A stretch of DNA of 47,411 bases from Bigelowiella natans CCMP2755 (taxonomy: Eukaryota > Protista > Cercozoa): positions 1 to 47,411 of the forward strand of contig ADNK01002130.1 in the NCBI GenBank assembly GCA_000320545.1, in the 5' to 3' direction. Position 1 is the stretch's first letter. Each line of letters begins with the position of its first letter. The position numbers and the translations under genes were made by a program. Below the pieces are notes generated by a model. It was not told the origin of the DNA, did not search any database, and saw only the letters and a list, made by a program, of their open reading frames with translations. Of this stretch, positions 6,829-36,987 are shown one piece after another.

Positions 6829-9800
6829 ACCCGAGAGATATCCCCTCGTCGTGGCACCAGCCGATATCACCCTCCTTAACATTCTTCTTGAAACGGCGTT
6901 TCGTCTTCCCTCTTCTACCTCGGCCCGCCCCTGCTGAGTCCTCGCCACTATCACTATCATCATCATCTTCGTTGTCATCAACGTCCTTGCCGTTCTTTCT
7001 CTTCTTCTTTTTCTTGATCGTCCTCTTCTTTCTTGTTTCCTTGCTCTGCTTCCTCGTGCCGGAGTTAGCCGCTTTTGATCCTGTTTGGGAAATAATGATA
7101 TTGGTGAGAATAATGATAATAAAAATGGAAATAATAATTGGAATGATTTAGATACAGTCAGAAAGATTGCATTGGTGCAAATCGAAGCCCTTTCACTGCG
7201 ACACGCATCGAGAACAAGCATGATCGTTATCGGTCCTCTCCAACAATGATTTGATTTGTGATGAATTTTGGACATCGTTATGCGTCATATCTCTATTACC
7301 ACCTCTTTTAGCCTTCTTGCCTGTGTTGGGTGGGGTATAGTTCTCCTCCTCTTCCTGCTCATAATCATCACCATCGTCGTCGTCGTCGTCGTCGTCCTGT
7401 CCGTCCGCTCCCTCTTCTTCATCGTCATCCTCATCCTCCTCCTCCTCCTCATTCACAACAAAGTCGGGATCCTTATCCTCGTCATCGACATCACGCCTCT
7501 CCCCCTTCTCTGCTTTTCCAGCAGCTTCGTCCTCATTCTCGCTGGAGTCATCAACGTAGGACACTACCCCCCTCGACGTTCGTGGGCTCCTTCGTAATAA
7601 TAAAGAGGGTGGGCACGGCATAGGCAGGGAAAGGGGCTCCTCTTCTTCCTTGTTCTCTGCCTCATCAAGCTCCTTCTGCTTCTGCTTCTTCTTCTGTCCT
7701 TTCTTCAGTCCCCCCCCTAGACTTCGCAATCGGCGAGCGGCCCTCTTCCTGGGTTTCGGCGACTCTTCCTCTCTTTCCCCCTTTTCGGCTCCTCCCCCTC
7801 TCTGCTCCTTTTTGACAATCCCATCTGCTGCGGCAGGGGAACCACCAGCACCATCATTGCGTTTTCCCTGCCTCCCTGCTTGTTCTTGGTCATCGTCGGA
7901 GCTGCTCCCAAATATTTCTTCCAGAGGGGGTATATCAGTTAGGGTCCCCTCCTTTAAATCACATGATGCCTGTTTGGTGCGTCGAGTAGGTGTGTTTTCG
8001 AGCGGGCCCTTTGCCACCTCATCGGCGTCTTCATCGCTCGTGGGAACAGATGTTTTCGGAGTCTTCTTGCGACTACTATTTGTCGTCCTAGCCGATCTTC
8101 TGGTCACAGAAGGAGAGGCTTTGGAGGAGGAGGAGGAGGAGGAGGAGGAAGCGTTTGATCGTTTCTTTCCGGAGGGAGCCGAAGATTTTGTACGCTTCAC
8201 CCGTTTCGCACTACGCGGTGTTGTTGAAGCCTTCTTATTTCTGCTCCTCCTCCGTTTCTCAATACTTTTCAGAATCTCCGCCTGGGCGGTGGGGGAGTAG
8301 TCCTCCTCGTCGTCCTCACACGCCATAAGCTGGAGCGACATCGCAAGTTCAGCGTCCCTCCGAGTCTTTTCGTCCATACCCTTGTTATCCTCCACGAAAT
8401 CCTCTGCGTCGAAGCTATCGTCTTGCGATGATTTTGATTGAGCAGCTTTCTTTCTTGGGGTGCTTTTGTTCGAGCCTCGCCGTTTCTTAGTAACCTTGGT
8501 TTCTTTCTTGCTCTTCTGAGACTTTCTCGAGCTGCTTGTCCTGCCCTTCTTGACCCGCTTCGTCGATTTCCCACCGACCTCATTGCCCCCCTGCTCTTCG
8601 CCGTCACTGTCACCGGCCTCCTCGATCTTTTTTTTGGGTCGTCCTCGTCTCTTGTTGGCCCTGCCTGTCTTCTTCTCGTTCACTTCCTCGTCGGCATCTT
8701 TTAAGCTTCCCTTCGTCGCAGATCGTCCCCGTCGCTTCTTCGGTGGCGGTTTCTTTACAACATTTTCCTTCTCTTCTTCTTCTTCTTCTTCTTCTTCTTC
8801 TTCGTCATCGTCCTCGGAAGGTATCTTTCTCTTCTTCGCGTTCTTTCCCTTAGATCTTCCCCGTCGTTTTGTCAGCGGTGCTGATTTTTTCATGCCTGTT
8901 GCTTCTTGATCATCATCATCATCGTCATCGTTCTCCTCATTATCATCGTCCACTCGATCATCATTGTTCTCCTTTTCCTCCTCTTCGTTCTCCTCTTCAG
9001 TGCCGTCCTTTCCTTCTCGTGGCTCCTGGCTGCGGGGAGCCTTCTCAAACCATGGTATTGGATCCCGATTTGCCTGGGATATAATTTCAGGAAAGAACGG
9101 TATCAAATTGCAACCCATCATTATTATTTGCAGCGGCTATACCTGCGACATGATTTCTCGGTATATATTTGAAGGGGTCGGGACGTTGGTGCCAATCCGA
9201 AGCGTCTTCATAGCTTTTTTCAGCGCCTTTTTGGTCATCTTTCAATAGAAATTGCAATAAATGTCACGTCAGTGCATAGGACGACAGGGAGTGAGCTTAG
9301 GCTAACAATTCTCACACCTTTCGAGGGTTTCTTTTCTCAGTTTTCGCCTGCTTCGCAGTTCTCTTTGCATTTGGTCCGCAAAAGTAGTAGTTGTGCGACT
9401 TCAGCGTTCTCGGCAAAAACTGGAATATTTGCAAATACACCATTGGCAAAAAAGACATCATTTTGGATCATGATGATATCGGCCAGCTAAGATTGGGTGT
9501 TACCTTTCTTCCGCAGTACTTGCAAGCCACCTATGTGTTTTGAAGAGGATAGCAATAAGTGACATTTTTGATGAAAAGCCTCGGTCTCAGAAACGCAACT
9601 TAGAGACAGCTATGAGATATAGTTAATGTTAGGGAAACAACCTTGTGTTGATCGAGAATCCTTCGGAACTCATACTCGAGAACACTGTATGTCGTGAGGA
9701 CCTGGTGATGTAAATCACAGAAAAAGACAAGATTGTTTACGAGAAGAGAAAATGTATCATTAGGGTTAGGTTGATCAACAAACAGCCACCCTAACTTGGT

Positions 9801-23443: not shown

Positions 23444-23953
23444 GAGCGTTTATGCGTTATGTCTACATTAATGTACATCATGAAGACGCGACTGCAGTGA
23501 TAAGAAAACGAAGTTTTCCTCATCACCATCATCATAAGACAGTGATAAGCGCGTTGTGCTTGCTGTTGTCCGTTTTAGGTACTGCGATGACGTAGACTTC
23601 AAAGTGCTTCTGGCGGAAATTGAGAAACTGTTAGCATGATTTTAAATACTCGCGATGATCACAATTTGTGCCCCATACTGATGAACGCACACACATGTGC
23701 ATGCATCAGCATACATGTACATATATGCACCATAGATCTAAATCCGTGTCTATATTTTTCAGGGTGAACACGGAGAAGCCGCCCGAAGATGATGACGATA
23801 GCGTAGTGGCTCATTAACTATTCCTAAGATTTCCATCGGTCCAAGAAACGACATGATTATGGTATTCTTCAGGTGCATGGATCGGACTTGGATCCTGAGA
23901 CGGGTTTACCGATGGACATCAAAGCTATGGAACGTCTTGAAGAAGAAGACTAA
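11522..23953 (+). CDS. RECQ: RecQ-family 3'-5' DNA helicase with a RECQL4-like C-terminal region, split into many short exons. The 5' end is uncertain and may carry a signal/bipartite leader
   Basis: Spliced exons give FGHGMFRDGQEAVL...GEDVLGILPTGGGKSLLYQLP (motif 0/I), IVVSPLISLMKDQV (Ia), [29 protein letters not shown] (II plus aromatic loop), LLTATC (III), SFYRPNL, AIVYT (IV), YHAGL, [43 protein letters not shown] (V/VI). These are followed by LSRDLDMPQSLLLRLLAYL and PRLAAKFLVGMASPK...LFG, and a stop at 23951-23953. Confidence 0.93.
15805..15893. repeat. Compound intronic microsatellite (CA)n(GA)n plus poly-G. Representative of dozens of (CA)n, (GA)n, (TA)n, (CAT)n, (AAC)n and (AGT)n tracts in introns across the window
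   Basis: Read directly. Similar tracts at ~1895, 2780, 3395, 4840, 6790, 16220, 20360, 21175, 22470, 31680, 38370 and 39940. Confidence 0.95.
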
Positions 23954-23978
23954 CGATCGTGGTGTTTACACGTGCGTA

Positions 23979-24916
23979 GTCAAATGCATCACCTTCTGCA
24001 AATGAATGCCAACGCCAAGCGGTGCAGGAACATGTTGTTGCAATTTGGGCAGATGATGAGAACGCTGTGTGCATGCAGATGATGGACAAATTGGTTTGGC
24101 CTGCTTCTGAAAACTGAAATCACACGTGTGAAGAACAATTCGTGTGTCAGTGTGCGCACCTGGCGGCTAGCTGGGCAGGCAGATGTTGGAGCATGGTGTC
24201 TGTCCAAGCTCATGTCAGCATTGTCAATTCTGCATTGATTTGAGACAATCGACGCTTCGGAAAATGTCAGTGCTGGCGACACACGCTAGACACGTCTTGA
24301 TGCATTGAAGTCGAAGCAACAATCAGTTTCGCACCTTGCTGTTCTGGGCAAGTCTAGAAGTGTGCAAAATTGGAGCAAGTGTGATGGACACAGTGATGTC
24401 ACACACGTGGCACGTGTGTCACATTGCACGTCCATCACAAGCAGCGACGTGCAAAACGGCGAGTGCACCAAGTCGTTGAACGCAACGCAGCGTGCTGGTT
24501 TTCTCACTTGCCAAAACGAACGATTCACCACGCCAGCACGCCGCCAGCACGCTGCATGGCACGTCCAAACATTCAGACGTCGTGCCACGCCAGCACGTCG
24601 CACGCAACAGTGTTCGCACAACCACGAAGTCAAACGTCCAGGTTTCGCACGTCCTGCGCAACCCCTGCGCATGGGTCATCCATGTCTTTGTTTTTTTTGG
24701 CCATGCAACAACACCAACACACAGCATCGTTTCGGGAAGGTTGCATCGTTCCAATGAATGAACAATGAACAAAGCGTTGATCAAAAACTAAATGCGCCAG
24801 AACCACATGGGAGACAGGCATTTGCACACAGCAGAGCCTCAACAACACTCGTTCCATTTCCACAGTCAAGATTCACAAAAAGATTGCGTTCCCTGAATGG
24901 GAAACTGAAATCGACA
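23979..24916. other. TpA-depleted intergenic island 1
   Basis: Manual count finds only 4 TA in 938 bp (CTAG at 24167, 24286, 24354; CTAA at 24788). TG/CA-rich, CpG retained. Confidence 0.92.
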
Positions 24917-25347
24917 TAATTTCCATGTCGCGATCTAGGAATCGCGTCCATTCACGTGCCTTTTCAACTTCCACAAATCCAGTCCCTCGGGCCATTTTGT
25001 GACGTTGCCATTCGAAAGCGAGCTCCCCCATCACTTGTGTCTACTAGGTCTACTCTGTTGAGCGCGATGTGTAGATCGTTTTGGTTCTAAAATGCATGTG
25101 ACCCGTGTGCCCATGTGTGGATATGGAAACCAAAAGTTGAGATGCGCCCAATGAGCGAGCATCGTTTTAGCTGCGGAAGAATTACATTATCATGTTTCAT
25201 CGTCATTCATTGATACCGAAATGATGTTGGTTTTTGTTCACATTCAACATTGCAGATAGCAACCCAATGAAAAATTATCAAAAATCGGAAATTGCGAGCG
25301 AAATTAGTGACATCTTCTTCTCTTAGATTCTAGTCACCTACAACGAA

Positions 25348-26523
25348 ATGGTCTGGACGTTCGAGGCGGCTACTCAGGGCTTGTACAATGCGGTATCAGA
25401 TGGATTCTATGTCGGTGTAAGCGGGGGCGCTGCTATGATGGCTCAGGTTGTGCATTGTCTAATCACTACACATGTTCAAATTGAACGAATGGTGGCGAAG
25501 AAACATAAATTACGATATGAAATCTTTGCTGAATCGCCATCATCCTTCTACGAAACATACATACTGATACCCACTTAGGTGACTACCTTCATGTGGTTAC
25601 ACACAGTAATGAAATATCAGTATCGATTTGGAACAAGCATAACAGAAACTTTCGCTGCATTGTGGAAGGACGGAGGTTTCTTACGCTTTTATCGGGGCTA
25701 TGGCATGGCAATCGTCAATGCACCGATTAGCCGAGCAGGAAGCACAGCCGCCAACAAGGCCGCTCTAACATTCCTAGATCACATGATTGCATCTTCGGAG
25801 AAAGAGAATCAGCATAAAGGCAATGATAGCATTCGACTTCCAATGTGGGTCACGACTGTCTTTTCAGCTTCCATTGCATCTGTAGGAAAAATATTCCTCA
25901 CTCCCTTCGATATGGTTCAGACATCTTTACAGGTGGGAAGAAAGGGTGCACACTCTGACATAATGGGGAAAATCCGTCGTGACGGAATATTTGTCCTCTG
26001 GCATGGCAGCGCAGCCATTTATCTCTCGTCCATTGTGTCCAACTTCTCCTGGTTTTGTGTTTACAATACGCTTAGCCATCGATGGGAATTGCCCCCATTG
26101 ACCCCACGCCACAGTAATGCTAATAGTCATAGCAGTAGGGATCCCAATCTATCTGAGAATAGCAGCTACGACAGGGATCCCATGAATGCTGATGATGATT
26201 TCGAAAACCACGGAGAGATTGGAAAGAGAAGGGTTCATCACGTGCTTATTCGCGATGCTACCATTGGTATTTGTGCATCGTTCACTGCGGACATTGCGAC
26301 CAATTCGCTCAAGGTTCTAAAAACACACAGACAGACTACACCAAATAGCATCGGTTACACAACAGCCTTTTTTGACATCACGCGCACGGATGGATTCATC
26401 GGACCCTTTACCAGAGGACTCAAAGTGAGGATATTTGTTAATGGCTGTCAAGGGGCCTTTTTCACAATGATATGGAATGGGCTGCAGAGAAGACTCCTTC
26501 CATTAGATAACCAAAATCAATAA
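25348..26523 (+). CDS. Mitochondrial carrier family (SLC25-like) protein. Exons ~25348-25446 and 25579-26523; the start may lie slightly upstream
   Basis: SGGAAMMAQ|VTTFMWLHTVMKYQYRFGT...LWKDGGFLRFYRG, LTPFDMVQTSLQV...DGIFVLWHG and TNSLKVLKTHRQT...DGFIGPFTRGLKVRI form three degenerate carrier repeats related to Px(D/E)xx(K/R) and (D/E)GxxxxxRG. Confidence 0.88.
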
Positions 26524-26748
26524 TTCAAGGGTTGGGCATCATGTTTGAGTGCACAGCAGCGATGAAAAGTGCTGAATAAACCAGAAATGAACTCGAAACA
26601 TTGTGCATGCTACCTGCTCATGCTCATCACTCATCACACGTCTAGTGTTGTTGCAACGTCATTGCAATCGCATGTGGAATCGTGTTAGTCCTCATAGTCA
26701 CGCGTGCAGAACACACTCTAGAGTGTGTAGCACAGTGTCACTAGTGTA

Positions 26749-27682
26749 GCAAGTTCACACAAAGCAATGCAAATCTGAAAATGTGCAACAAATTGAGTGA
26801 GAGCAGATGTGTGCATGTGTGCATGTGTGTGTGTCATTGCATGCAGCTGGCATGTGCGTGTGTGTGGGCACTGTGTTGCAAGCAGCGCACACAGCGTGGA
26901 TGATGGCTGTGGCATGAATGGGCATGGCCATGATCAAATGAGTGCATTCTGGCTGTCACAGTGCAAACCTCACTGACTCTGGTGCTCACGCACAGCTGCC
27001 TCGTCGTTGACAGTTTTGACGGATCAATTGGTGTTCCGCCATGATGTGATCATTGCCACTCTGCCTAGCTCTGGCACTGCTAGACTGCCCGTGAAACAAT
27101 GGAATTTTGTGTGCAGGCAGTTTTGACTCTCATCGACATTTCATGTTTGACAACAATGTTGATTTTCCCTTTTCAATCTCCTTCAGTGAGTCCATCACAA
27201 GGCTCTCACTTCTGGACGGAGAGGTTTGCGAGTTGCACAGCTGACAAGTGCTTTGGCTCACACCAGCAGAACGCACATTGCCACCCTGTTGTCCTTCAAA
27301 GGAGAGGAAAGTGACTGCACATTCTCCCTGCTCTTCTTGCAAGGAATCATCTGATTTTGATGCTTGCGCAGAAGTGATCATCAGCAGGCACCGCTAGACC
27401 GGTTCAGAGGTGTGTGCCACACAGCACACGTGATGCAAATTCTGCACAACGCTGCGTGTGCAGGATGAACAATGAACAATGAACAATGAACAATGATGAT
27501 GAACCAAATTTCCAAAACGTTGCAAGACACTTGCAGTGTGCGAGACGCAGTGCCTCGAACTAGCTTCAGTGAGGACCAACTGGTGAACCAGCAGGGTGAC
27601 GAACGTCATTGCTTCTTTGAAGTCGATCAGAGCAGCGACGAACAATCGGCGGTTTGATCAGTGCGACAATCGATGACAGTCT
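26749..27682. other. TpA-depleted intergenic island 2
   Basis: Manual count finds only 4 TA in 934 bp, all in CTAG (27065, 27080, 27394, 27560). Confidence 0.93.
27465..27496 (+). repeat. (ATGAACA)4.5 heptamer tandem repeat; two copies of the same unit at 24758-24771
   Basis: Read directly from the sequence. Confidence 0.85.
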
Positions 27683-27816
27683 TAATGATCTGAAATGAAG
27701 CGTGAGTCTTGTACGTCCTGCGACATTTAATTGTCAGCTTCAAAGGTCGAAAACAAAGGGGATTTTTGCGATTTTGCGCTCAAATTTGAACATATTCAAA
27801 TTTTGCTCCCTGCCCC

Positions 27817-29703
27817 ATGGCCAACCTCCCTCTGAAAGGAGTGTTCCCTCTCGTGATCCTCTTTCTCTATGGGCCACGGGAACATGCCATTTCTCATGGC
27901 GAAAACCGGGGATGGGGAGGCATTTTGATGGCGCATTCTGCTCGGGTTGTGAGGAGGGCAATCATTAATCAGACAGCCCTCGAGCACACAATCAGGGCCT
28001 ATCGTGTTGAGTCGCCGTTCTCAAAGGTGACCAAATTCTTCAACGGTGAAACTGGATGGGCCTGTTGTCGACCTTGTGTAACAGAGCATTATCCACAAGT
28101 CGATGACATGTTTGGGACGAGTGAAGCCTACGGAGATGCAGTTGGCACAGTGCCTTTGATAATGAGAATGCAAGATCAGTTAGAGCAGGTAATAGTAGAA
28201 ATGCTGCTGCCGTTCGGTGGATGTATGTGATTGTTTCTATCAAGTTGCACTTCAGTAGAAAACAGGATTCCGCTTCGAATATTTGTCTACTTTCCTGAAA
28301 GCCATGTGTACGTATCTACAGAGGAACACGCCCAGGGCCATCTTCAAGCGAAAATTGGCAGAGATTCGGGAACTAGTAGAAAAGGAGCTAGAACGAAACA
28401 GAACGGCGTCTGCGTCAAAATCCTCGAGCGGAAGTAAAAGCTCAAAATCTGGGAATTCCAAAAACAAAGGATCTTCACCAAAGAAAGGAGTGACCGTCGA
28501 CGAGCGTGGAATGGCATATCAGCCTGAAGAATGGGGTTCGTTGCATTAAATTTCAGTTTTTAGTGTCGAACAACAATTGCACCATCACATCTCACGTTCA
28601 GCAGATGGCCTCCTTTCTTCTCAAATCATAGTTGTTCTTCGTGCTTATTATAAAACTGCTACCAACATCGATAGGTAACAAAGAAAACAAATGCTGCCCC
28701 GTATGTCCGCAAGAAATGGTAGCTGCGATCGAGATATCGTCCGAATATACCACGTGGTCATCCCAGAGGGAAGAAAACGAGGAGGGGGGGGAGGATATAT
28801 CAATCGGAGGGAAGCCAAAGTCATCTTCCAAAAAAAAATCGAATTCAAAGTCATCTTCTTCAAAAAAATCGAGTTCTAAGTCCTCATCCTCCTCGAAAGC
28901 AAGCTCAAAGTCAAAGTCCTCATCCTCCTCGAAATTGGCGTCAAGCAGCAGCTCGCCAGGTCCTTTAGCGGGTCTCTCTGCTGCCGTTAAAAATCGGATC
29001 AAAGCTGAGAATTATGGTGAAAGAAACCGATATTTGAACGTCCCGATGACATCGCTAGATATGCCTCCTTGCTGCCGCTTCTGCGACGCTCCCTATTCAA
29101 AGGTAGTAAAAAGCATAAGCAACCATATCAATTTTTCTGAGAAGAATTTCCGGCACATTTGAAAATAGAAGGAGACACAGGGAAAGGGGGGAGGGGGCTG
29201 CTGATGCTGATGATGTTGTGTTGGCTTTAGCTGGCAACGTCTTGATACCTCGCCTTTTGTGCTGTTTATTCGGTACTCAGAAACGGTACGCAGATGTCGT
29301 GTCGCTACCCTATCAGAAGTATCACTACACAGGGGACGGAAAGACGTTCGGCTTTAGAGGACCGACTGTACCCCACATGCAACGAGACTATAGACCAGTG
29401 ATATTTGCTGAAACTGAGTCGGTATCCTCCTCCTCCTCCTCCGCCTCAGCTTTGTCATCGAGTACGAGTGAAGAGAATATGAACTCTCAGAAGATTTCTC
29501 AGGCTTCATCGCAGTCTGAGGCGAAGGGCAGCCAGGGAGTGTTCCCCATTAAAGGCTACAGCCCTGCGAAGCCAGCTCCGCAGTGTTGTCAGGATTGCAC
29601 GGTGCCTCCAGAGACCGGAGAAAACTCTATACTTAAATGGGACAACCTACAGGCTGGCTTCGAAGTACCTCAAGAGGCTTTCAAACCAATATATGTCCAT
29701 TAG
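27817..29703 (+). CDS. Hypothetical, probably secreted protein with four CCxxC motifs and Ser/Lys-rich linkers (about 4 exons)
   Basis: The N-terminus is hydrophobic (LKGVFPLVILFLYG). In-frame splices link ORFs 27817, 28283, 28632 and 29218. Motifs are CCRPC, CCPVC, CCRFC and CCQDC; stop at 29701-29703. Confidence 0.7.
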
Positions 29704-29771
29704 AATTTCTCGCATACTAACATGCGAAGATTATTTTTGGCGCTGCTATCTCCTGTTATTTGTGCTCTGTG

Positions 29772-29803
<32 letters not shown>

Positions 29804-30516
29804 GCCAATCATGAGAGCGTGATGCATTGAGTCATAAACTGTAATCAGAAGTTGCTATTGTGTGCATAAGAATGTAAATTTCTTGCGTATACATGTTTGC
29901 ATCCATTCGTCACTGCATGCAGCACGCACGCTCTTGCTTTGTCATGTTTCACAGGCTCATAGAGATTGCGCAGTTTTCGCATGCACATTGAACATATATA
30001 AATATTTCATCAACCTGCGAATACATTCTGCGTTTTCACAATGCAGGCCTTTGGTGTATGTGTACGTACGCTGTATATTAGTGTAGGTAAAAAACGCATC
30101 TCTAGTAGCAATATATTACCAGGCCATATCTAGATTATGCAAACGACAGCTTTAGCTTAGCTACGTCAGCGCACCACGACAAAGCCACTACTCCTACACC
30201 ATTCCGCATATATTATACACTCCCATAGCATACTTCTCACAATATTATAAGTTGACTCCGCTGTGCTGTTTCCATTGTCAACCCCATCATTTTAAGTAAC
30301 ACGCATCATGCATGCGCTCTTCGTTCATCGCGCGCACATTTCTCATCTGTCGCCGTCACTGAGGAACTTCGCTACGCCAGGGAACATCCTTTCCGGTGAA
30401 ATCGGCACGTATGGTATCTCTAAGACATCTTTGCAACCCTTGAAAACACAGAAAGCAGGTGGCGAGCAATAATACATATGCTGATCAGGATCGTAATGCA
30501 GTTTGTAAAAGGGCTT

Positions 30517-30796
30517 CTACTCCCCCGCTTTGCCCATCTCTCTTAACACCAGCCTCAACCTCGGCCCTTCATTGCATTTGAAAATTGCTACCTTATCGTG
30601 TGCTCGAAGAGCCTTCCGTAGCCTAGATCGAGCAGCCTCCTCCTCTGTACATTTCGAGGCGTGGTGTTTCGGTGATGGCGGCGACGATTTGCCCGCGAGG
30701 GGGGGTTCGAAATCAAGGATGGCCATCATTGCATGCAGCACGCCAGTCTGAGCAGGAAAAGCAAGTGAGCTGATATTATTATACATATTTACATTT

Positions 30797-30834
<38 letters not shown>

Positions 30835-31673
30835 TATATAATATGCATTATATCCCGACACAGTGATGCAGTAGCTTCGCTATCATGCATTGATCGAGAG
30901 GAAGGAGGAGGGGGAGGAGGAGTCCTTACCTTAAGACGCTTGTCGAAGTCTTGGTTATTTGTCATCATCGACGGATTTGCGTTAACCTTCACAAACAACA
31001 GATGATAAGAACACAGGTATTGATAGAATAGCAGCCGGCGGAGGAGGAGGAGGAAGAGCAGGAGGAAGAATAGAATGAGGGTGCGGAGAGCAGCAGTGGC
31101 AGTAACACCTCAAGCAAGTGAGGCCGTCCTTGCTGATCGAGGAGAAAGTCGAAGCCTAGGAGCTGGTAAAGTCCCCACTCGTGTGGGCTTGCAACGGATG
31201 TTTTCCTTTCCCCCTCATGCGTGCCCCTCCTCTCCGTCTTCTCGCCACCGACGCGGCTACCATCGCCGGCCATCGTAGCGGCAGCACCCGAGCGAGTTCT
31301 CCCTTGAAATGAGGCGGAGGCTGAGGAGGACGATGAGAATGCAGCACCTCCTTCCGAAGTGTCGATCATCCTACCTGTGCAGATTTTAGTTGCGGATGCC
31401 GCTCGCTTCTGCTTCCCCTCCCCCCCCTGTTTATCTCTCTCCTTTCTCCTCGGGACTCTGTAGAGGCCTCGGAGCAAACGGGAGACATCCTGATTGTAAC
31501 GTGCAAACGAGGAAGAAGGGGGGGGAGAGGTTGCTGCCTCAGGCATCGCTCGCACAGCGTTTGGCGTTGACGTTTGTTGCGGTGCAACGAATGAATACGG
31601 GGCACCGCCAGCAGCCGATGTAGGTAGCAGCAGTAGGACTAGTAAATACAAGAAAGCTCGTGTGCACACGTAG

Positions 31674-31731
<58 letters not shown>

Positions 31732-33087
31732 CGTGTGTACATAATGTGTGTATGCGTTGGTATCTCCTCACCTTCTCAACGACGCGTGGAGGGGGGTCTA
31801 CTCCATGTTTGAGCGTAGCCCAGCCTTTAGCTGGAGGGTGGTGATGACTAGCATAGCTGCTCGTCGTACTAGTTGCTGACTTGCCAACAGGTTTATCTCC
31901 ATCTTCTCCTTCGTTCTCAATGTGCGGAGCATCAACGCTGTAAAGATCGATTTCTATCTCTTCCTTTTTCTTCTTCTTCTTCTTCCTCTTCACCTTCGTC
32001 CTGCCAGTAGGCTCTTTGGCGCGACACTTCTGCTCTGATGGTGTAGTAGCTTCCGCTCCCTCCCCCCCCTCCCCCTTCTCAGATTTCTTGGAGTTTGTTT
32101 CTGCTGCTCCTGCTGGAGATGGCGCTGCTATACGGCTTAGCCACCACTTGTGCTTCCCGGTGGTAGCACCTTTAAGACAACATCAAATGCACGTCATCCA
32201 TCATCATTCCTCTCTGTTGTCGTAACACCTAAATATCCGACCTTTGGCCCTGCAGATGCGGAAAAGCCTCCCATCGAATGCAATCTATGAGGGGGGAGGA
32301 GGGAGGAGGAAGGAGGGGGAGGAGGAGGAAGAAGAGGGGAAGGAAGCAGAAATCAACTCGCACACACTGAATTGATATAATTGATGCTGCTTTTGTTTAC
32401 CTTTTCATATTTAGGCGCCCCCCCCCTTTTTCCGTTTTGCCAGAATTCCCCATCGACGGCATCGGACCCCTTTTGAATGTCCAGTGGAGGGAGAGGCGGT
32501 TGTCGTTTGATGATAGTGAAGATGAGCAGGTGTGGTTGGCAAGGGTGAGTGATACGAGACATAGGCGGCGATGACAAAAGCAGCAGCAGCAGCAGCAACA
32601 ACAACAACAACACATCAAAATTAGCGTGCTTAATACAGGTAGATTTGTGGAGTTTATTTACAGAGTAGTGGTAGTAGCAGTGATAGTAATAATTAGTACT
32701 AATAGTACTAATAGTGGTAATACCGCTCCAACGACCCACACCGTCGGTGCAAAGCGCTCATCAATCACTTTGCCAGTGTATGGGTTTCGCCGAGGTTCTT
32801 CTTGTTGTTGTTGCTGCTGCTGCTGCTGTCGTTGTAACACTCCGCCTCCCCCTTTTTCTTCCATCATCGCGCCTCCTTTAAAATCATCGTTGGCGCCCAC
32901 GTGAGTAGGGTAGATGATAGTGTGCGGGGGAGGCGGAATAGGCCTCTTTGCTTCCTCGAGTGCCTCCGAGAACGCCTTCTTCAAGCGAGGCTGGAGTGCC
33001 AGGAGCGTCTTTGCAACCATTTCGTCTACACGCCTCCAGAATGTTTGCTCTGTAAGCTGGGAGGAGTACCTAGAGGCGAACAAGGTT

Positions 33088-33119
<32 letters not shown>

Positions 33120-35491
33120 CGTGTTATTTTTCTTCGTCGTTTATCTTCTAATCTAATACGACACTGTTGGGGGAGGAGCTGGCTTGCATACCCTTGCTCT
33201 CGAAGCTGCTGAATGACGACCGATATCAGCCTTTTGTTGGCGTGAGGGTCTAATTCAACACCTCCAACAGCTGCTTCCTGTGAGGATGGAGATGACGACG
33301 AAACGATGATTACATGAAGTGATAGTGGTGGTAGTGGCACTAGGAGTAGTACTCGAGGTGGTAAGATGCGCCGGGATAATGTTACGGTCTTTGACATCAT
33401 CATCATCATCATCATCATCAACTTCATCATCATTTCCGCAACATAACTACGACACACACTGCATCGTTGGCAATTGTCGCCGCTGCCAGTGCCTGACGCG
33501 CCTGCTTACTTTGGTTTGTTTCTGAGCGTTATCTCCCGCCTCTGTTGTTTTCTTTTTAAGATTATCATGGCAACACAAGCAACAACGCCAGTGAATATTA
33601 ATCTAGATGCAAAAGAAGTGCTTCGCTTGCACTAAGCTGATGGTCGACAAAGGGCCAACTACCTTCTTTTCTTTTCCTTGCACGAATTTGTCGCTCATCT
33701 TGTTCAACGCATAGTTGGTGAGGTGGGAGCAAATCTGAGCATATGTATATGTTTAAATATGTGCTTGTGTGCGTTGTGTGGGCGCGTGTGTTTGTGAAAA
33801 TAAAGACCAGTATAACGCTACGATTTTAGGATTTTTTCAAGGATCATCACAGTTGTGATACAATTACGTTCGCGAGGTTCTCCGGTGCTGGCGCGCTGTA
33901 CTTCTCGACACAGACCCTAAGGAAGGAGGGGGGGGGGAGAGGGAGGAGGGAGAGGAGGAGGAAGCGAGAAGGAATAGAACGAAACAGATCAGCATGCCGC
34001 ACCAAAACTCAGCGAGCAAATCATTGGCCAAACGCTTCGAACGATAACATTCGATTTTGATTTGCCGTGTTGTTGTTGCTGTTGTTGTTGTCATTGTTGT
34101 TAGAGTCCTTCTTACCGCCCCATGCCTTCATGCAGCACATATGCCAGGAGAGGGTCAAGGCGACGGAGAACGACGTAGAGCCGACAGTCAAACTTGTACC
34201 CGTCCAAAAGCGCTGGCGCGGCAATGTACTCCTGCGCCATCTTGACGACGTACGTGCATGAAGAGGAGGCATTGGGTTATGTCAGTGAAAACTCAATCGA
34301 AACGCAGGGCTTAATAAATCCAAAAAGCAAGAGTCGAACCAATGATCCGTATCCTCGCATCTTCGCCAACCAGTTTTTCTTCTCAGCAAGCTTGCCCTAG
34401 GGGAGGGAGGGAGAGGACAGTAAGAATATGATGCAATGTTATATATAAAAACACCCGCGCGCGCGCACGGCCCTGCGAACCTCCGCCATGGCTTCATCCA
34501 CCTGCCCCCAGTTTTGCACCAGCTGTATTCTGACGACGGGGGGTGAATTAAGTGAGGAGGAGGAGGGGGGAGAGACGTTACTTTCATGACAATGGCTAGT
34601 GGGCAGAAGAGTAATGATGAAGATGGTGATGATGATGATGATGATTGATGGCAATCATATATAATATTGAGTGTTTTGTTTATTATCAAGCGACCCTCCG
34701 CCGCAGCTGCCTTTTAGAGGTTTAAGTATGTAGGTAGGAAGCTTGGAAGGCTTGGGACTAGAGGAGGAGGAGGAGGAGGAGGAGGAGGAAGAATCTGCTG
34801 CCGCTGCCGCTGCCGCTGCTTCTGCCCCCATTTGATTTTTCAACTCTTCAAACTCCTTCGGATCCATCAGATTCCAGCTGTGTTTGGGAGGGGGGAGGGT
34901 GTTTGGCGAAGAAAATGAGGGAAAATCCACCGCCCATCAACGTGAACATGAGATTGCTTATTTGAGGGAATAACGTGAGATGTGTGTGTACCCCCTTGGT
35001 AAGAAGTCAAATTCACCAGGAAATTGGTCTCGGACCCGATCAAACTGAACGCTTATATTGCCCTGTTGTTATTGTTGTTGTTGTTCATCAGATGTTAGTA
35101 AACGCGCTATACATTAACGTTCTAAAACGCGCAGAAGCACCCTTGCAAATACAAAATACGATACCACACAACTCGTACCGACTCTGTGTATGATGGATTA
35201 TTGGTGCCGTGTCTGTCGTTGTTTGTAATGAATTCGTCACAATGCTTGGACCTTATCCACAGCCTCTCGCATGCCAGGAAAATGATTCGTGATAGTCAAA
35301 TATCCAACGCCTGATGACGGATCCGCTCCTCCTCCTTTCCCGAAGATGGCTCGAAATGCAACGGGTGCCTCCGCTTCCCCGGTCAATAGTACCACAGAAA
35401 CGAAGTCGACGTCTTCGAACCCGCAGCTTGTATTAAGGAGCACACACGCACGCACGCACCATATATATTCTAAATATGTCTATGAGTGGAA

Positions 35492-35528
<37 letters not shown>

Positions 35529-36014
35529 GATTTTCTCTATACCGAGCCTTAGCCGCCTCGGCGACATCTCGAAGGTCGCGACGGAATTTCGCTACACGCT
35601 CCCGCTGAATGAGCCCGGTACCGTATGAGCGCCAATATCTCATCTGCAACGAACGAGTGAACGAGTCGTGTAGTAGAAACAATCGTTAGGAAAGAAGGCT
35701 GTCAATCGTCACACTGGTAACGGGGGAAACCTGTGTGCGTCTATGCAACACCTCACATGCTGACACGGTCTGAAAGCGCCCAAGCGAATATGATCGGACT
35801 GTCATGTTAGAACAGGGTGGTAGACAACCAGGTGTCAAATTATGATGACGATGTGTCAATTGAGAAAGAACGCGTATGTTTAACACTACTCGCAACTAAT
35901 GGTGGGAATAAATTTGATCGTTTTACAGTGCCGATGCGGTTTGCCTTTCCTTGGGCAGTCCTCGACGCGAAATCCCAGGGCACTTCGCCCGCCATTGAGC
36001 ACCACCACTGGCAT
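30517..36014 (-). CDS. TTLL11: Tubulin-tyrosine-ligase-like polyglutamylase, TTLL11-like, multi-exon (start uncertain)
   Basis: NHFPGMREAVDK, FPGEFDFLPRSW, YILKPLKGSCG, QEYIAAPALLDGYKFDCRLYV, EGMGRVCVEKY, SHLTNYALNK, YQLLGFDFLLDQQGRPHLLEVNANPSM. The EVNANPSM form is the one found in TTLL11. Confidence 0.88.
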
Positions 36015-36333
36015 GGAGCCTGGCCGCTCTAACTAGCCATCAGTCGACGATGCATGAACGGTACGACCAGGGAAATATTCGCATTAAGTGATTTTTTTTA
36101 GATGTTTTCCGATTAAAATGTAATCCAAAATAGTTTGGATAACGTGAGGCTCCGGTTTCCAGCCTGGACTCCAGTGTTGGACACAAAACTGCCCTAGGTT
36201 TGACTGAGGAGCTGAGCTTTTGACCAAACGCAAAGAAGAGAAGGCCTCGGTAGGGGGATCAATTAGGAAATCAGCAGTTTGTCTGTTGTCGCACCAGATG
36301 TTTACTCTTCAATGTTTGCAACTTGCAACGTTA

Positions 36334-36987
36334 GTCTTGCAACATTTTGGAAACGCAGCAGTGGAATGCTTGTTTTCCACGAGGTCCTTGCACGTGAACG
36401 ATGAAAACAACGATGATCAATGCCTGCATGAATGAATTGGGAACATGCCACTCTGTGAAATCCTTGCTGAGCATGTGTGTGCAATGTGCAATGTGCTGGT
36501 GTGGCAGCTGCAGCAATGCCATCTCCAAACCCAATTGCTCCAAACCTGGCCACCTGCACTCGATCCGTCCTTTTCCCGTGTTTGCTTGTGAGGTGCTCAG
36601 CTCGCATTGCTAGATTGCCATTGCAATGATGATCACACTTGAACAACAATTCCAGAGCTAGAGAGTTCTAGAGTTGTGCGTTCAAGTCCATTCCAGCATT
36701 GCACGTGACTGTTGAAAATTGAACGCGTTGAACATTGAAATTTCGGCACCGCTCACACAGCACAACAATGTCATCACAAAAGGATGATTTTTTCGTCCTG
36801 ATGATTTCACAGCCTCTCACCATAGCCACGTCTGATTCCGAATGCAGATGTCCATTGTTTCGATCCGGTTGCAAGAGCATGAGAGCATGCAAAACTGCAA
36901 AACAACAAGACAACTCTCGCGGATCTGGCTAGCTGGCGCTGCAGCAAGTGCACTCGACGGAACGTGGCATTCTAGCATTGCTTGAAA
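36334..36987. other. TpA-depleted intergenic island 3
   Basis: Manual count finds 6 TA in 654 bp: CTAG at 36610, 36658, 36668, 36929 and 36972, plus ATAG at 36822. Confidence 0.9.

What the first reader, a model, noticed from the sequence alone, without database searches (positions are those of the whole stretch)
23979..36987. Candidate 'reverse-RIP' system: regional TpA to TpG/CpA hypermutation of intergenic DNA
Seen: three separate intergenic islands (23979-24916, 26749-27682, 36334-36987; 2526 bp in total) contain only 14 TpA by manual count. About 150 would be expected at roughly equal base composition. The islands are rich in TG/CA and keep plenty of CpG, while neighbouring introns carry long perfect (TA)n tracts. 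Established: fungal RIP converts CpA to TpA and so enriches TA, and 5mC deamination depletes CpG, so neither fits. Inference: a targeted process converts A to G in TA on both strands (seen as TA to TG and TA to CA) to near saturation in bounded domains. Candidates are a DNA adenine deaminase (TadA-family enzymes favour a 5' T/U), deamination of a modified adenine, or a mutagenic thymine modification. I do not recognise this as a named, characterised pathway.
Basis: partly seen in the sequence, partly recalled or inferred. Interest (0 to 1): 0.93.

Follow-up and report, generated by a model that had tools for sequence, protein, structure and literature searches.

The report
TpA-erased islands beside algal LINE ends
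Three stretches between genes of the alga Bigelowiella natans have had nearly every TA turned into TG or CA by a genome-defence mutator already reported in a 2026 preprint; here each stretch is anchored on a scrap of retrotransposon, one only 25 bases long, and runs about 0.7 kb off one side into single-copy DNA.

Summary
Confirmed: 14 TpA in 2,526 bp against about 134 expected (P~1e-39). Twelve lie in CTAG. An independent DNA run matches the unique parts of islands 1-2 exactly.

The genome is Bigelowiella natans.

Not in the preprint's main text:
(1) Each island has a LINE 3'-end fragment at one edge (97, 133 and 25 bp). The TA-free zone lies on its 3' side in single-copy DNA: median ~750 bp versus ~75 bp, 36 of 39 loci.
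(2) Direction is polarised in the LINE parts: conserved ORF2 tyrosines became Cys/His.
(3) A 5' C or 3' G slows the process; CTAG escapes almost entirely.
(4) LINE 5' ends face a promoter-like GCGACA motif, and a spliced antisense RNA enters island 1.
(5) No Argonaute was found.

This scan found the process, CTAG sparing and one-sided spread earlier on other contigs. The enzyme and targeting step remain inferred.

The parts
23978..24916 (.). Island 1, TA-free core. About 760 bp of single-copy DNA on the 3' side of a LINE-A fragment; begins ~25 bp after the stop codon of the upstream + gene and includes its 3' UTR (RNA to ~24088)
24757..24853 (-). 5'-truncated 3' end of non-LTR retrotransposon (LINE) family A with (TTGTTCA)n tail; possible 8-bp target-site duplication at 24746-24753 and 24849-24856
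   Evidence: 61 further genomic matches; longer copies carry the ORF2 C-terminus, 36-39% identical to the RVT_1 protein P0012; TSD
24917..25121 (.). Graded 5'-side edge of island 1: apart from one ATAA at 24917, only CTA/TAG-context TA survive
24926..24931 (-). GCGACA/TGTCGC promoter-like motif at the LINE-5' boundary of island 1
24798..25448 (-). Spliced antisense RNA (intron 25171-25337, GT..AG on the minus strand) running from the 5' region of the carrier gene into the LINE-A fragment in the LINE's sense direction
   Evidence: run X15 contig 2 (RNA status of the run is the tool's guess, but the contig is spliced)
25347..26523 (+). Mitochondrial carrier gene (Bigna1/140086, aug1.54_g14794), intron about 25449-25573; normal TA content; separates islands 1 and 2
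26578..26748 (.). Graded far edge of island 2: only CTA/TAG-context TA survive
26749..27682 (.). Island 2, TA-free core; about 720 bp of single-copy DNA on the 3' side of a LINE-B fragment
27465..27597 (-). 5'-truncated 3' end of LINE family B with (TTGTTCA)n tail
   Evidence: 75 further genomic matches
27663..27725 (+). Two GCGACA motifs (27663, 27720) between the LINE-B 5' end and the next ORF start at 27817 (+)
36287..36292 (-). GCGACA/TGTCGC motif at the LINE-5' boundary of island 3; a minus-strand gene probably starts ~36010-36085 (inferred from reading frame only)
36334..36358 (+). 25-bp fragment of the LINE-B 3' end (24/25 identical to copies L024 and L027; 22/22 to L036), lying exactly at the left edge of island 3 with its 3' side facing the island
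   Evidence: E 8e-6 to 3e-5 against the fetched loci; missed by the genome DNA search
36334..36987 (.). Island 3, TA-free core; otherwise single-copy; graded edge to ~37235, near the stop (37305) of a minus-strand ORF

Best explanation
The islands are end-state scars of the B. natans TpA hypermutator, a host genome-defence process that converts T:A to C:G at TpA on either strand (TA>TG or TA>CA).

Shown: (a) the process exists in this species (published mutation-accumulation lines); (b) LINE sequences here lost TA by this route; (c) each island in the window has a LINE 3'-end fragment at one edge, and the TA-free zone extends ~0.6-0.9 kb into single-copy DNA on the LINE's 3' side only; (d) loss depends on the neighbouring bases: no flanking 5' C or 3' G is fast, one is slower, and CTAG is nearly immune.

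Inferred: the LINE fragment nucleates the domain (~0.85). The one-sidedness most likely arises because the fragment sits beside a host promoter whose divergent transcript reads through it in the LINE-sense direction, and the mutator acts along that transcribed path until it fades at ~0.7 kb (~0.5; the rival is a promoter barrier). The chemistry is most likely adenine deamination, A>I>G, by a TadA/ADAT-fold enzyme reading both neighbouring base pairs (~0.6).
For: Species: genome 91.4 Mb in 3,736 contigs; the carrier protein is 99% identical to P0002, which clusters with Bigna1/140086; a LINE ORF is 100% identical to Bigna1/146792.

Preprint: 231 de novo mutations in two viral regions, all but one AT>GC and reported to fall on TpA; TpA-poor coding sequences are enriched for reverse transcriptase.

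Polarity: all 6 positions where the intact outgroup ORF2 P0012 has Tyr read Cys (TGC x3), His (CAC x2) or Arg (CGT) in copy L019. At Tyr974, copies show TAC, TGC, TGT and CAT. A TA-intact relative L055 has 3 TA in 104 bp, and all 3 are TG or CA in L019. TG<>CA swaps dominate double transitions between diverged copies (12 of 20, 11 of 14).

Rate: among young family-A copies the transition rate at TpA is 0.21 versus 0.0015-0.008 elsewhere.

Strand symmetry in flanks: TG 1857, CA 1872.

Asymmetry: median 748 versus 73 bp, 36/39 loci, Wilcoxon P=9e-9. Bounded lengths cluster (mean 638 bp, CV 0.36, not exponential, P=7e-4).

Context: survival in 36.7 kb of unique island DNA is 0.04-0.11 (no C/G flank), 0.13 (one) and 0.98 (CTAG). 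The TAG/CTA context makes up 23 of 225 published de novo events versus ~52 expected (hand count, background from my loci).

Promoter geometry: GCGACA 33 versus 8.7 expected within 300 bp beyond LINE 5' ends (P=3e-10). Spliced antisense RNA enters island 1, and raw RNA reads on the LINE fragments are about 95% one orientation, LINE-sense if the neighbouring gene's reads calibrate the library.
Against: The single-copy flanks could not be polarised against an orthologous empty site. Only one informative site was found, TA>CA at 26540 versus an orthologous 3' UTR; the metagenome scan found no ortholog. No new mutation was seen in run X5, as expected at saturation. In the window each island also ends near a gene's 3' end and beside a promoter, so transcription-driven polarity and a barrier cannot be separated. 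A splice-motif test of neighbouring gene orientation in the other loci was uninformative. No Piwi domain was found, so a standard small-RNA guide is not available. The 39 loci were selected by similarity to the window's copies.
Confidence: 0.8

Rival explanations
1. Same mutator, but the one-sidedness is a barrier effect. A silent chromatin domain spreads both ways from the LINE fragment, is stopped within ~100 bp by the adjacent promoter, and runs on the other side up to the next gene. LINEs merely insert, or survive, with their 5' end towards promoters.
For: GCGACA lies within 300 bp of the 5' end in 22 of 35 loci. All three window islands fill the gap between a gene's 3' end and the next promoter. 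Partial depletion does extend 50-300 bp on the 5' side.
Against: The clustering of 3' flank lengths near 0.6-0.9 kb suggests an intrinsic reach rather than the distance to the next gene. The asymmetry persists in loci without the exact motif.
Confidence: 0.35
2. The islands came first, as old, unrecognisably decayed transposon or viral DNA, and LINE ends later inserted at their promoter-side edge.
For: Some islands hold several LINE scraps. Old insertions would have lost detectable similarity.
Against: Flanks of 98-99% identical young copies are unrelated to each other and unique. No ORF2 similarity in the window. Island 1 includes an expressed 3' UTR. The island edge coincides with a 25-bp scrap in island 3. 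TA loss fades with distance from the tail.
Confidence: 0.12
3. The lesion is on thymine, not adenine: a modified T at TpA (for example 5-hydroxymethyluracil) mispairs with G and gives T>C.
For: TpA is its own reverse complement, so T>C and A>G cannot be told apart from sequence. From my own knowledge, 5hmU in a dinoflagellate was reported to prefer TpA and TpC.
Against: No Tet_JBP match in the genome (inconclusive, since no control genome matched either). TpC is not depleted (observed/expected 1.0).
Confidence: 0.25
4. Assembly artefact, intrinsically TA-poor repeats, or 3' transduction.
For: The family-A source element was already TA-purged when its young copies spread; only two TA sites, both CTA, vary among them.
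Against: Independent contigs match with 0 differences. Most island DNA is single-copy. Target-site-duplication-like repeats abut the tail in W1, L008, L010 and L015.
Confidence: 0.03

Closest known systems
TpA hypermutation of Bigelowiella natans (Mettrop et al., bioRxiv 10.64898/2026.01.13.699255)
   Same: Same species, same change (TpA>TpG/CpA on both strands), same long-term footprint, association with transposon and viral DNA, same candidate chemistry (ADAT2-like Bn78255).
   Different: The preprint treats 25-186 kb viral regions, coding sequences and clusters of at least three 1-kb windows. Its main text has no occurrence of CTAG, context, flank or spread. Sub-kilobase islands, one-sided spread into host single-copy DNA, a 25-bp nucleating scrap and the context hierarchy are not described there.
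Fungal repeat-induced point mutation (RIP) and RIP leakage
   Same: Dinucleotide-specific, strand-symmetric, near-saturating transitions at repeats that leak into neighbouring single-copy DNA (papers using the term: PMC3105345, PMC9453070, not read in full).
   Different: Opposite direction (RIP is C>T at CpA and creates TpA). From my own knowledge RIP needs hundreds of bp of duplication and the sexual cycle, and leakage is not known to be polar. Here it was measured in clonal lines and on a single-copy virus.
Piwi-guided co-transcriptional silencing in Drosophila (Sienski et al. 2012, PMC3504300)
   Same: A domain nucleated by a transposon insertion that spreads asymmetrically downstream with transcription.
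   Different: That is a histone mark over 10-15 kb, not mutation, and it needs Piwi. No Piwi domain was found here.
TadA/ADAT2, ADAR and AID/APOBEC deaminases
   Same: A>I>G chemistry with a 5' T/U preference; hypermutation as defence.
   Different: No natural eukaryotic enzyme is shown to do regional A>G on chromosomal DNA in this alga. Six MafB19/TadA-like loci and one ADAT1/ADAR-like locus exist but are untested.

Membership tests
B. natans TpA hypermutation (Mettrop 2026) | Genome is B. natans | tested here: met
B. natans TpA hypermutation (Mettrop 2026) | TpA depleted with CpA+TpG enriched (Rho TpA <=0.43, Rho CpA+TpG >=1.52) | tested here: met
   TA observed/expected 0.07-0.13; TG and CA 1.7-1.9
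B. natans TpA hypermutation (Mettrop 2026) | Direction TA>TG/CA, both strands | tested here: met
   LINE parts. Flanks: strand symmetry only
B. natans TpA hypermutation (Mettrop 2026) | Targets foreign or transposon DNA | tested here: met
   LINE 3' ends at all three islands; most mutated bases are nevertheless host single-copy DNA
B. natans TpA hypermutation (Mettrop 2026) | Raised de novo mutation rate at these loci today | not testable with these tools
   Saturated; one DNA run shows 0 differences
Fungal RIP | C>T at CpA, TpA enriched | tested here: not met
   TpA depleted, CpA enriched
Fungal RIP | Leakage into adjacent single-copy DNA | tested here: met
   but one-sided
5mC deamination | CpG strongly depleted as the source of TG/CA | tested here: not met
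   CpG observed/expected 0.74-0.79; outgroup codons are Tyr (TAY), not CG-containing
Argonaute/Piwi-guided transposon silencing | Piwi-domain protein in the genome | tested here: inconclusive
   0 candidates while the controls matched. The intron-rich draft assembly prevents a firm absence. An RdRP gene is present
TadA/ADAT DNA adenine deaminase | Deaminase-fold gene present | tested here: met
   6 PF14437 loci, 1 PF02137 locus; such genes are universal, so this is weak
TadA/ADAT DNA adenine deaminase | Activity on DNA at TpA; deoxyinosine in target DNA | not testable with these tools
   needs biochemistry
TET/JBP thymine oxidation | Tet_JBP gene | tested here: inconclusive
   no match, and no control genome matched either

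The most novel reading that the evidence does not exclude
An Argonaute-independent, transcription-coupled DNA adenine-editing defence. As little as ~25 bp of LINE 3'-end sequence in a promoter-divergent transcript recruits an enzyme that rewrites TpA on both strands for ~0.7 kb downstream into host DNA, reads both flanking base pairs (CTAG spared), and operates in more than one chlorarachniophyte-like lineage.
Probability: 0.3. Interest if true: 0.85.

Novelty: already known. Interest (0 to 1): 0.48.

Why it matters
The mutator itself is published as a preprint, but its enzyme and targeting are open questions. These islands narrow both. The substrate rule (5' C and 3' G disfavoured; CTAG spared but GTAC not, so it is not duplex stability) is a fingerprint against which candidate deaminases can be assayed. 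The one-sided ~0.7-kb reach from scraps as short as 25 bp points to a sequence-triggered, directional step and gives a simple reporter design. The process also rewrites host intergenic DNA and 3' UTRs, not only foreign DNA. A natural enzyme that edits A in chromosomal DNA would interest the base-editing field.

Tried and rejected
The metagenome scan for an orthologous carrier locus found none. The only ortholog (L049, a transcript) aligns just ~40 bp into the 3' UTR. Splice-motif strand scoring could not call neighbouring gene orientation. Pfam missed the degraded LINE ORFs; identity came from the phmmer search. The TA-poor stretches at 1496-1694, 7621-7913 and 8491-9055 are coding or simple-repeat sequence without a LINE scrap and were rejected as islands. 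RIP, CpG decay, 3' transduction and assembly error were rejected as set out under rivals. A paper on giant viruses of B. natans has no CTAG methylation motif. No paper was found on the GCGACA motif or on B. natans Argonaute.
Full report
OBSERVATION. The three islands hold 4, 4 and 6 TpA, against 57, 60 and 45 expected from composition, with TG and CA at 1.7-1.9 times expectation and CpG at 0.74. Against the rest of the window 134 are expected (P=7e-40). Twelve of the 14 survivors are in CTAG, and the other two are CTAA and ATAG. Contigs of a public DNA run match 23449-24781 and 24798-27493 without a difference at single-copy depth (the run is flagged as a possible source of the assembly).

ORGANISM AND PRIOR WORK. 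The carrier gene between islands 1 and 2 is 99% identical to a protein that clusters with Bigna1/140086 of Bigelowiella natans, and a LINE frame from this genome equals Bigna1/146792. A paper search returned Mettrop et al., bioRxiv 10.64898/2026.01.13.699255. In mutation-accumulation lines, two integrated viral regions mutate about 1000 times faster than the rest of the genome, almost only A>G or T>C at TpA. TpA-poor coding sequences are enriched for reverse transcriptase and DDE domains. An ADAT2 homologue is proposed. The main text does not contain the words CTAG, context, flank or spread.

ANATOMY. Island 1 ends in a 97-bp repeat (24757-24853) and island 2 in a 133-bp repeat (27465-27597), each with dozens of genomic matches. 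Longer copies carry the C-terminal part of a LINE ORF2, 36-39% identical to an intact 1,118-aa RVT_1 protein, P0012. The repeats are therefore 5'-truncated LINE 3' ends on the minus strand with a (TTGTTCA)n tail. The remaining 700-800 bp of each island are unique in the genome. Island 3 gave no hit in the genome search, but a short-word comparison shows that its first 25 bases (36334-36358) are a piece of the family-B 3' end on the plus strand, with its 3' side facing the island. In all three cases the order is: 3' end of a gene, unique TA-free DNA, LINE tail, LINE 5' end, promoter-like motif, next gene pointing away (the gene left of island 3 is inferred from reading frame only).

ONE-SIDED SPREAD. 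Across 39 oriented loci the TA-free zone runs a median 748 bp beyond the tail and 73 bp beyond the 5' end (36 of 39, P=9e-9). Survival of unprotected TA rises with distance on the tail side: 0.05, 0.11, 0.24, 0.50 and 0.91 in successive 200-bp bins, while on the 5' side it is 0.53 by 50-100 bp. Bounded flank lengths cluster (mean 638 bp, CV 0.36). Flanks of 98-99% identical copies are unrelated to each other, and several insertions show duplication-like repeats directly at the tail, so this is not 3' transduction. TG and CA are gained equally (1857 versus 1872), so it is not a single-strand event.

DIRECTION. Where the intact outgroup has tyrosine, copy L019 has TGC, TGC, CAC, TGC, CAC and CGT; three of these columns are 70-86% Tyr among 146 outgroup proteins. 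At one Tyr, copies show TAC, TGC, TGT and CAT. A TA-normal relative differs from L019 by TA>TG twice and TA>CA once, at all three of its TA sites in 104 bp. Among 19 young family-A copies, only two TA sites remained in the source, both CTA, and they account for 10 of 19 transitions, about 100 times the background per base (some variants may be shared by descent). For the unique flanks, direction is inferred from the same context pattern and from GC of 51% against 44.8% intergenic in the preprint. Only one site could be polarised directly (TA>CA at 26540).

CONTEXT RULE. In 36.7 kb of unique island DNA, survival relative to background is 0.04-0.11 with no C before or G after, 0.13 with one, and 0.98 for CTAG. 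GTAC, of equal GC content, is not spared (0.11). GCTAG and TCTAG survive better than ACTAG and CCTAG. My hand count of the published mutation list gives 23 of 225 events in TAG/CTA, against about 52 expected from my background. CTAG is not absolutely immune: family-B columns show CTAG, CTGG and CCAG side by side. It is about 2.3-fold above background in tail-side flanks, which TA loss alone does not explain.

TARGETING CLUES. GCGACA/TGTCGC is the most enriched hexamer within 300 bp beyond LINE 5' ends (33 versus 8.7). In the window it also lies 24-36 bp before the three longest open frames, so it is probably a promoter element (inference). A spliced minus-strand RNA runs from the 5' region of the carrier gene into the LINE-A fragment, RNA contigs cover parts of islands 1 and 2, and raw RNA reads on the LINE fragments are about 95% one orientation. 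The genome has an RdRP gene, six TadA/MafB19-like loci and one ADAT1/ADAR-like locus, but no Piwi-domain candidate and no Tet_JBP match (inconclusive).

MECHANISM. Shown: TA>TG/CA on both strands, context dependence, and a one-sided domain tied to LINE 3' ends. Inferred: nucleation by the fragment (~0.85); polarity from divergent read-through transcription (~0.5) rather than a promoter barrier (~0.35); adenine deamination (~0.6) rather than a thymine lesion (~0.25). Simple arithmetic on the preprint's numbers (about 210 events, about 6,000 TpA, 3,132 generations) gives roughly 1e-5 per site per generation, fast enough to saturate a flank well within the age implied by 1% divergence between copies.

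BEYOND THIS GENOME. Two environmental LINE fragments show the footprint: L053 (TA observed/expected 0.33; 15 of 16 survivors in CTA/TAG; no match in this assembly) and L054 (0.04). A transcriptome contig 85% identical to family A is TA-free, with 12 TG/CA swaps. The source organisms are not named by the tools.

COMPARISON AND VERDICT. It works like RIP in reverse, with leakage, but fails RIP's defining C>T test. It is an instance of the published B. natans process. Earlier reports of this scan on other contigs reached the same reading, including CTAG sparing and one-sided spread; I had found the preprint and the asymmetry before reading them. The GCGACA boundary motif appeared in none of them. 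Novelty: already known, with useful unpublished detail.

Noticed in passing
window 24926, 27663, 27720, 36287, 9145, 32021, 42697: TGCGACA/TGTCGCA motif with AT-rich flanks, 4-fold enriched beside LINE 5' ends and 24-36 bp before the three longest ORFs: probable undescribed B. natans promoter element.
   Followed up: partly
whole genome G000: No Piwi-domain candidate although an RdRP gene is present on contig C1073: possible Argonaute loss.
   Followed up: partly
L004, L008, L015, L016, L017, L019; G000:C1194:9992-11770: Family-A copies 98-99% identical derive from an already TA-purged, nearly tyrosine-free source, and a 654-aa ORF2 frame is still open. A purged element may still have been mobilised. 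Stops in ORF2 copies are mostly TGA (9 TGA, 2 TAG, 0 TAA).
   Followed up: partly
L053, L054 (ENA metagenome contigs): LINE fragments from unnamed organisms with the same TpA loss; L053 keeps TA almost only in CTA/TAG.
   Followed up: partly
preprint Table S2: A>G at TAG (4) and T>C at CTA (19) should be equal by strand symmetry but are not; four T>C rows list ATG or ATT contexts that are not TpA. Unexplained.
   Followed up: no
tail-side flanks, 200-800 bp from the LINE tail: CTAG is about 2.3-fold above background, mostly as GCTAGC and GCTAGA; it may be a sink fed by C>T at CCAG/CTGG.
   Followed up: partly
L020:1598-1927 and L011:307-636: A 330-bp LTR-like segment, 100% identical in two loci and TA-rich, sits directly against TA-free islands (in L020 it interrupts a LINE end and leads into a gag-like frame): recent insertions not yet mutated.
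   Followed up: no
window 25347-26523 and 24798-25448: The carrier gene starts ~230 bp upstream of the listed ORF (intron ~25449-25573) and overlaps a spliced antisense RNA.
   Followed up: partly
L055 (GCA_039817665.1): A eukaryotic LINE 86% identical to family A over 104 bp sits in an assembly labelled as a Bacteroidota MAG, probably contamination.
   Followed up: no
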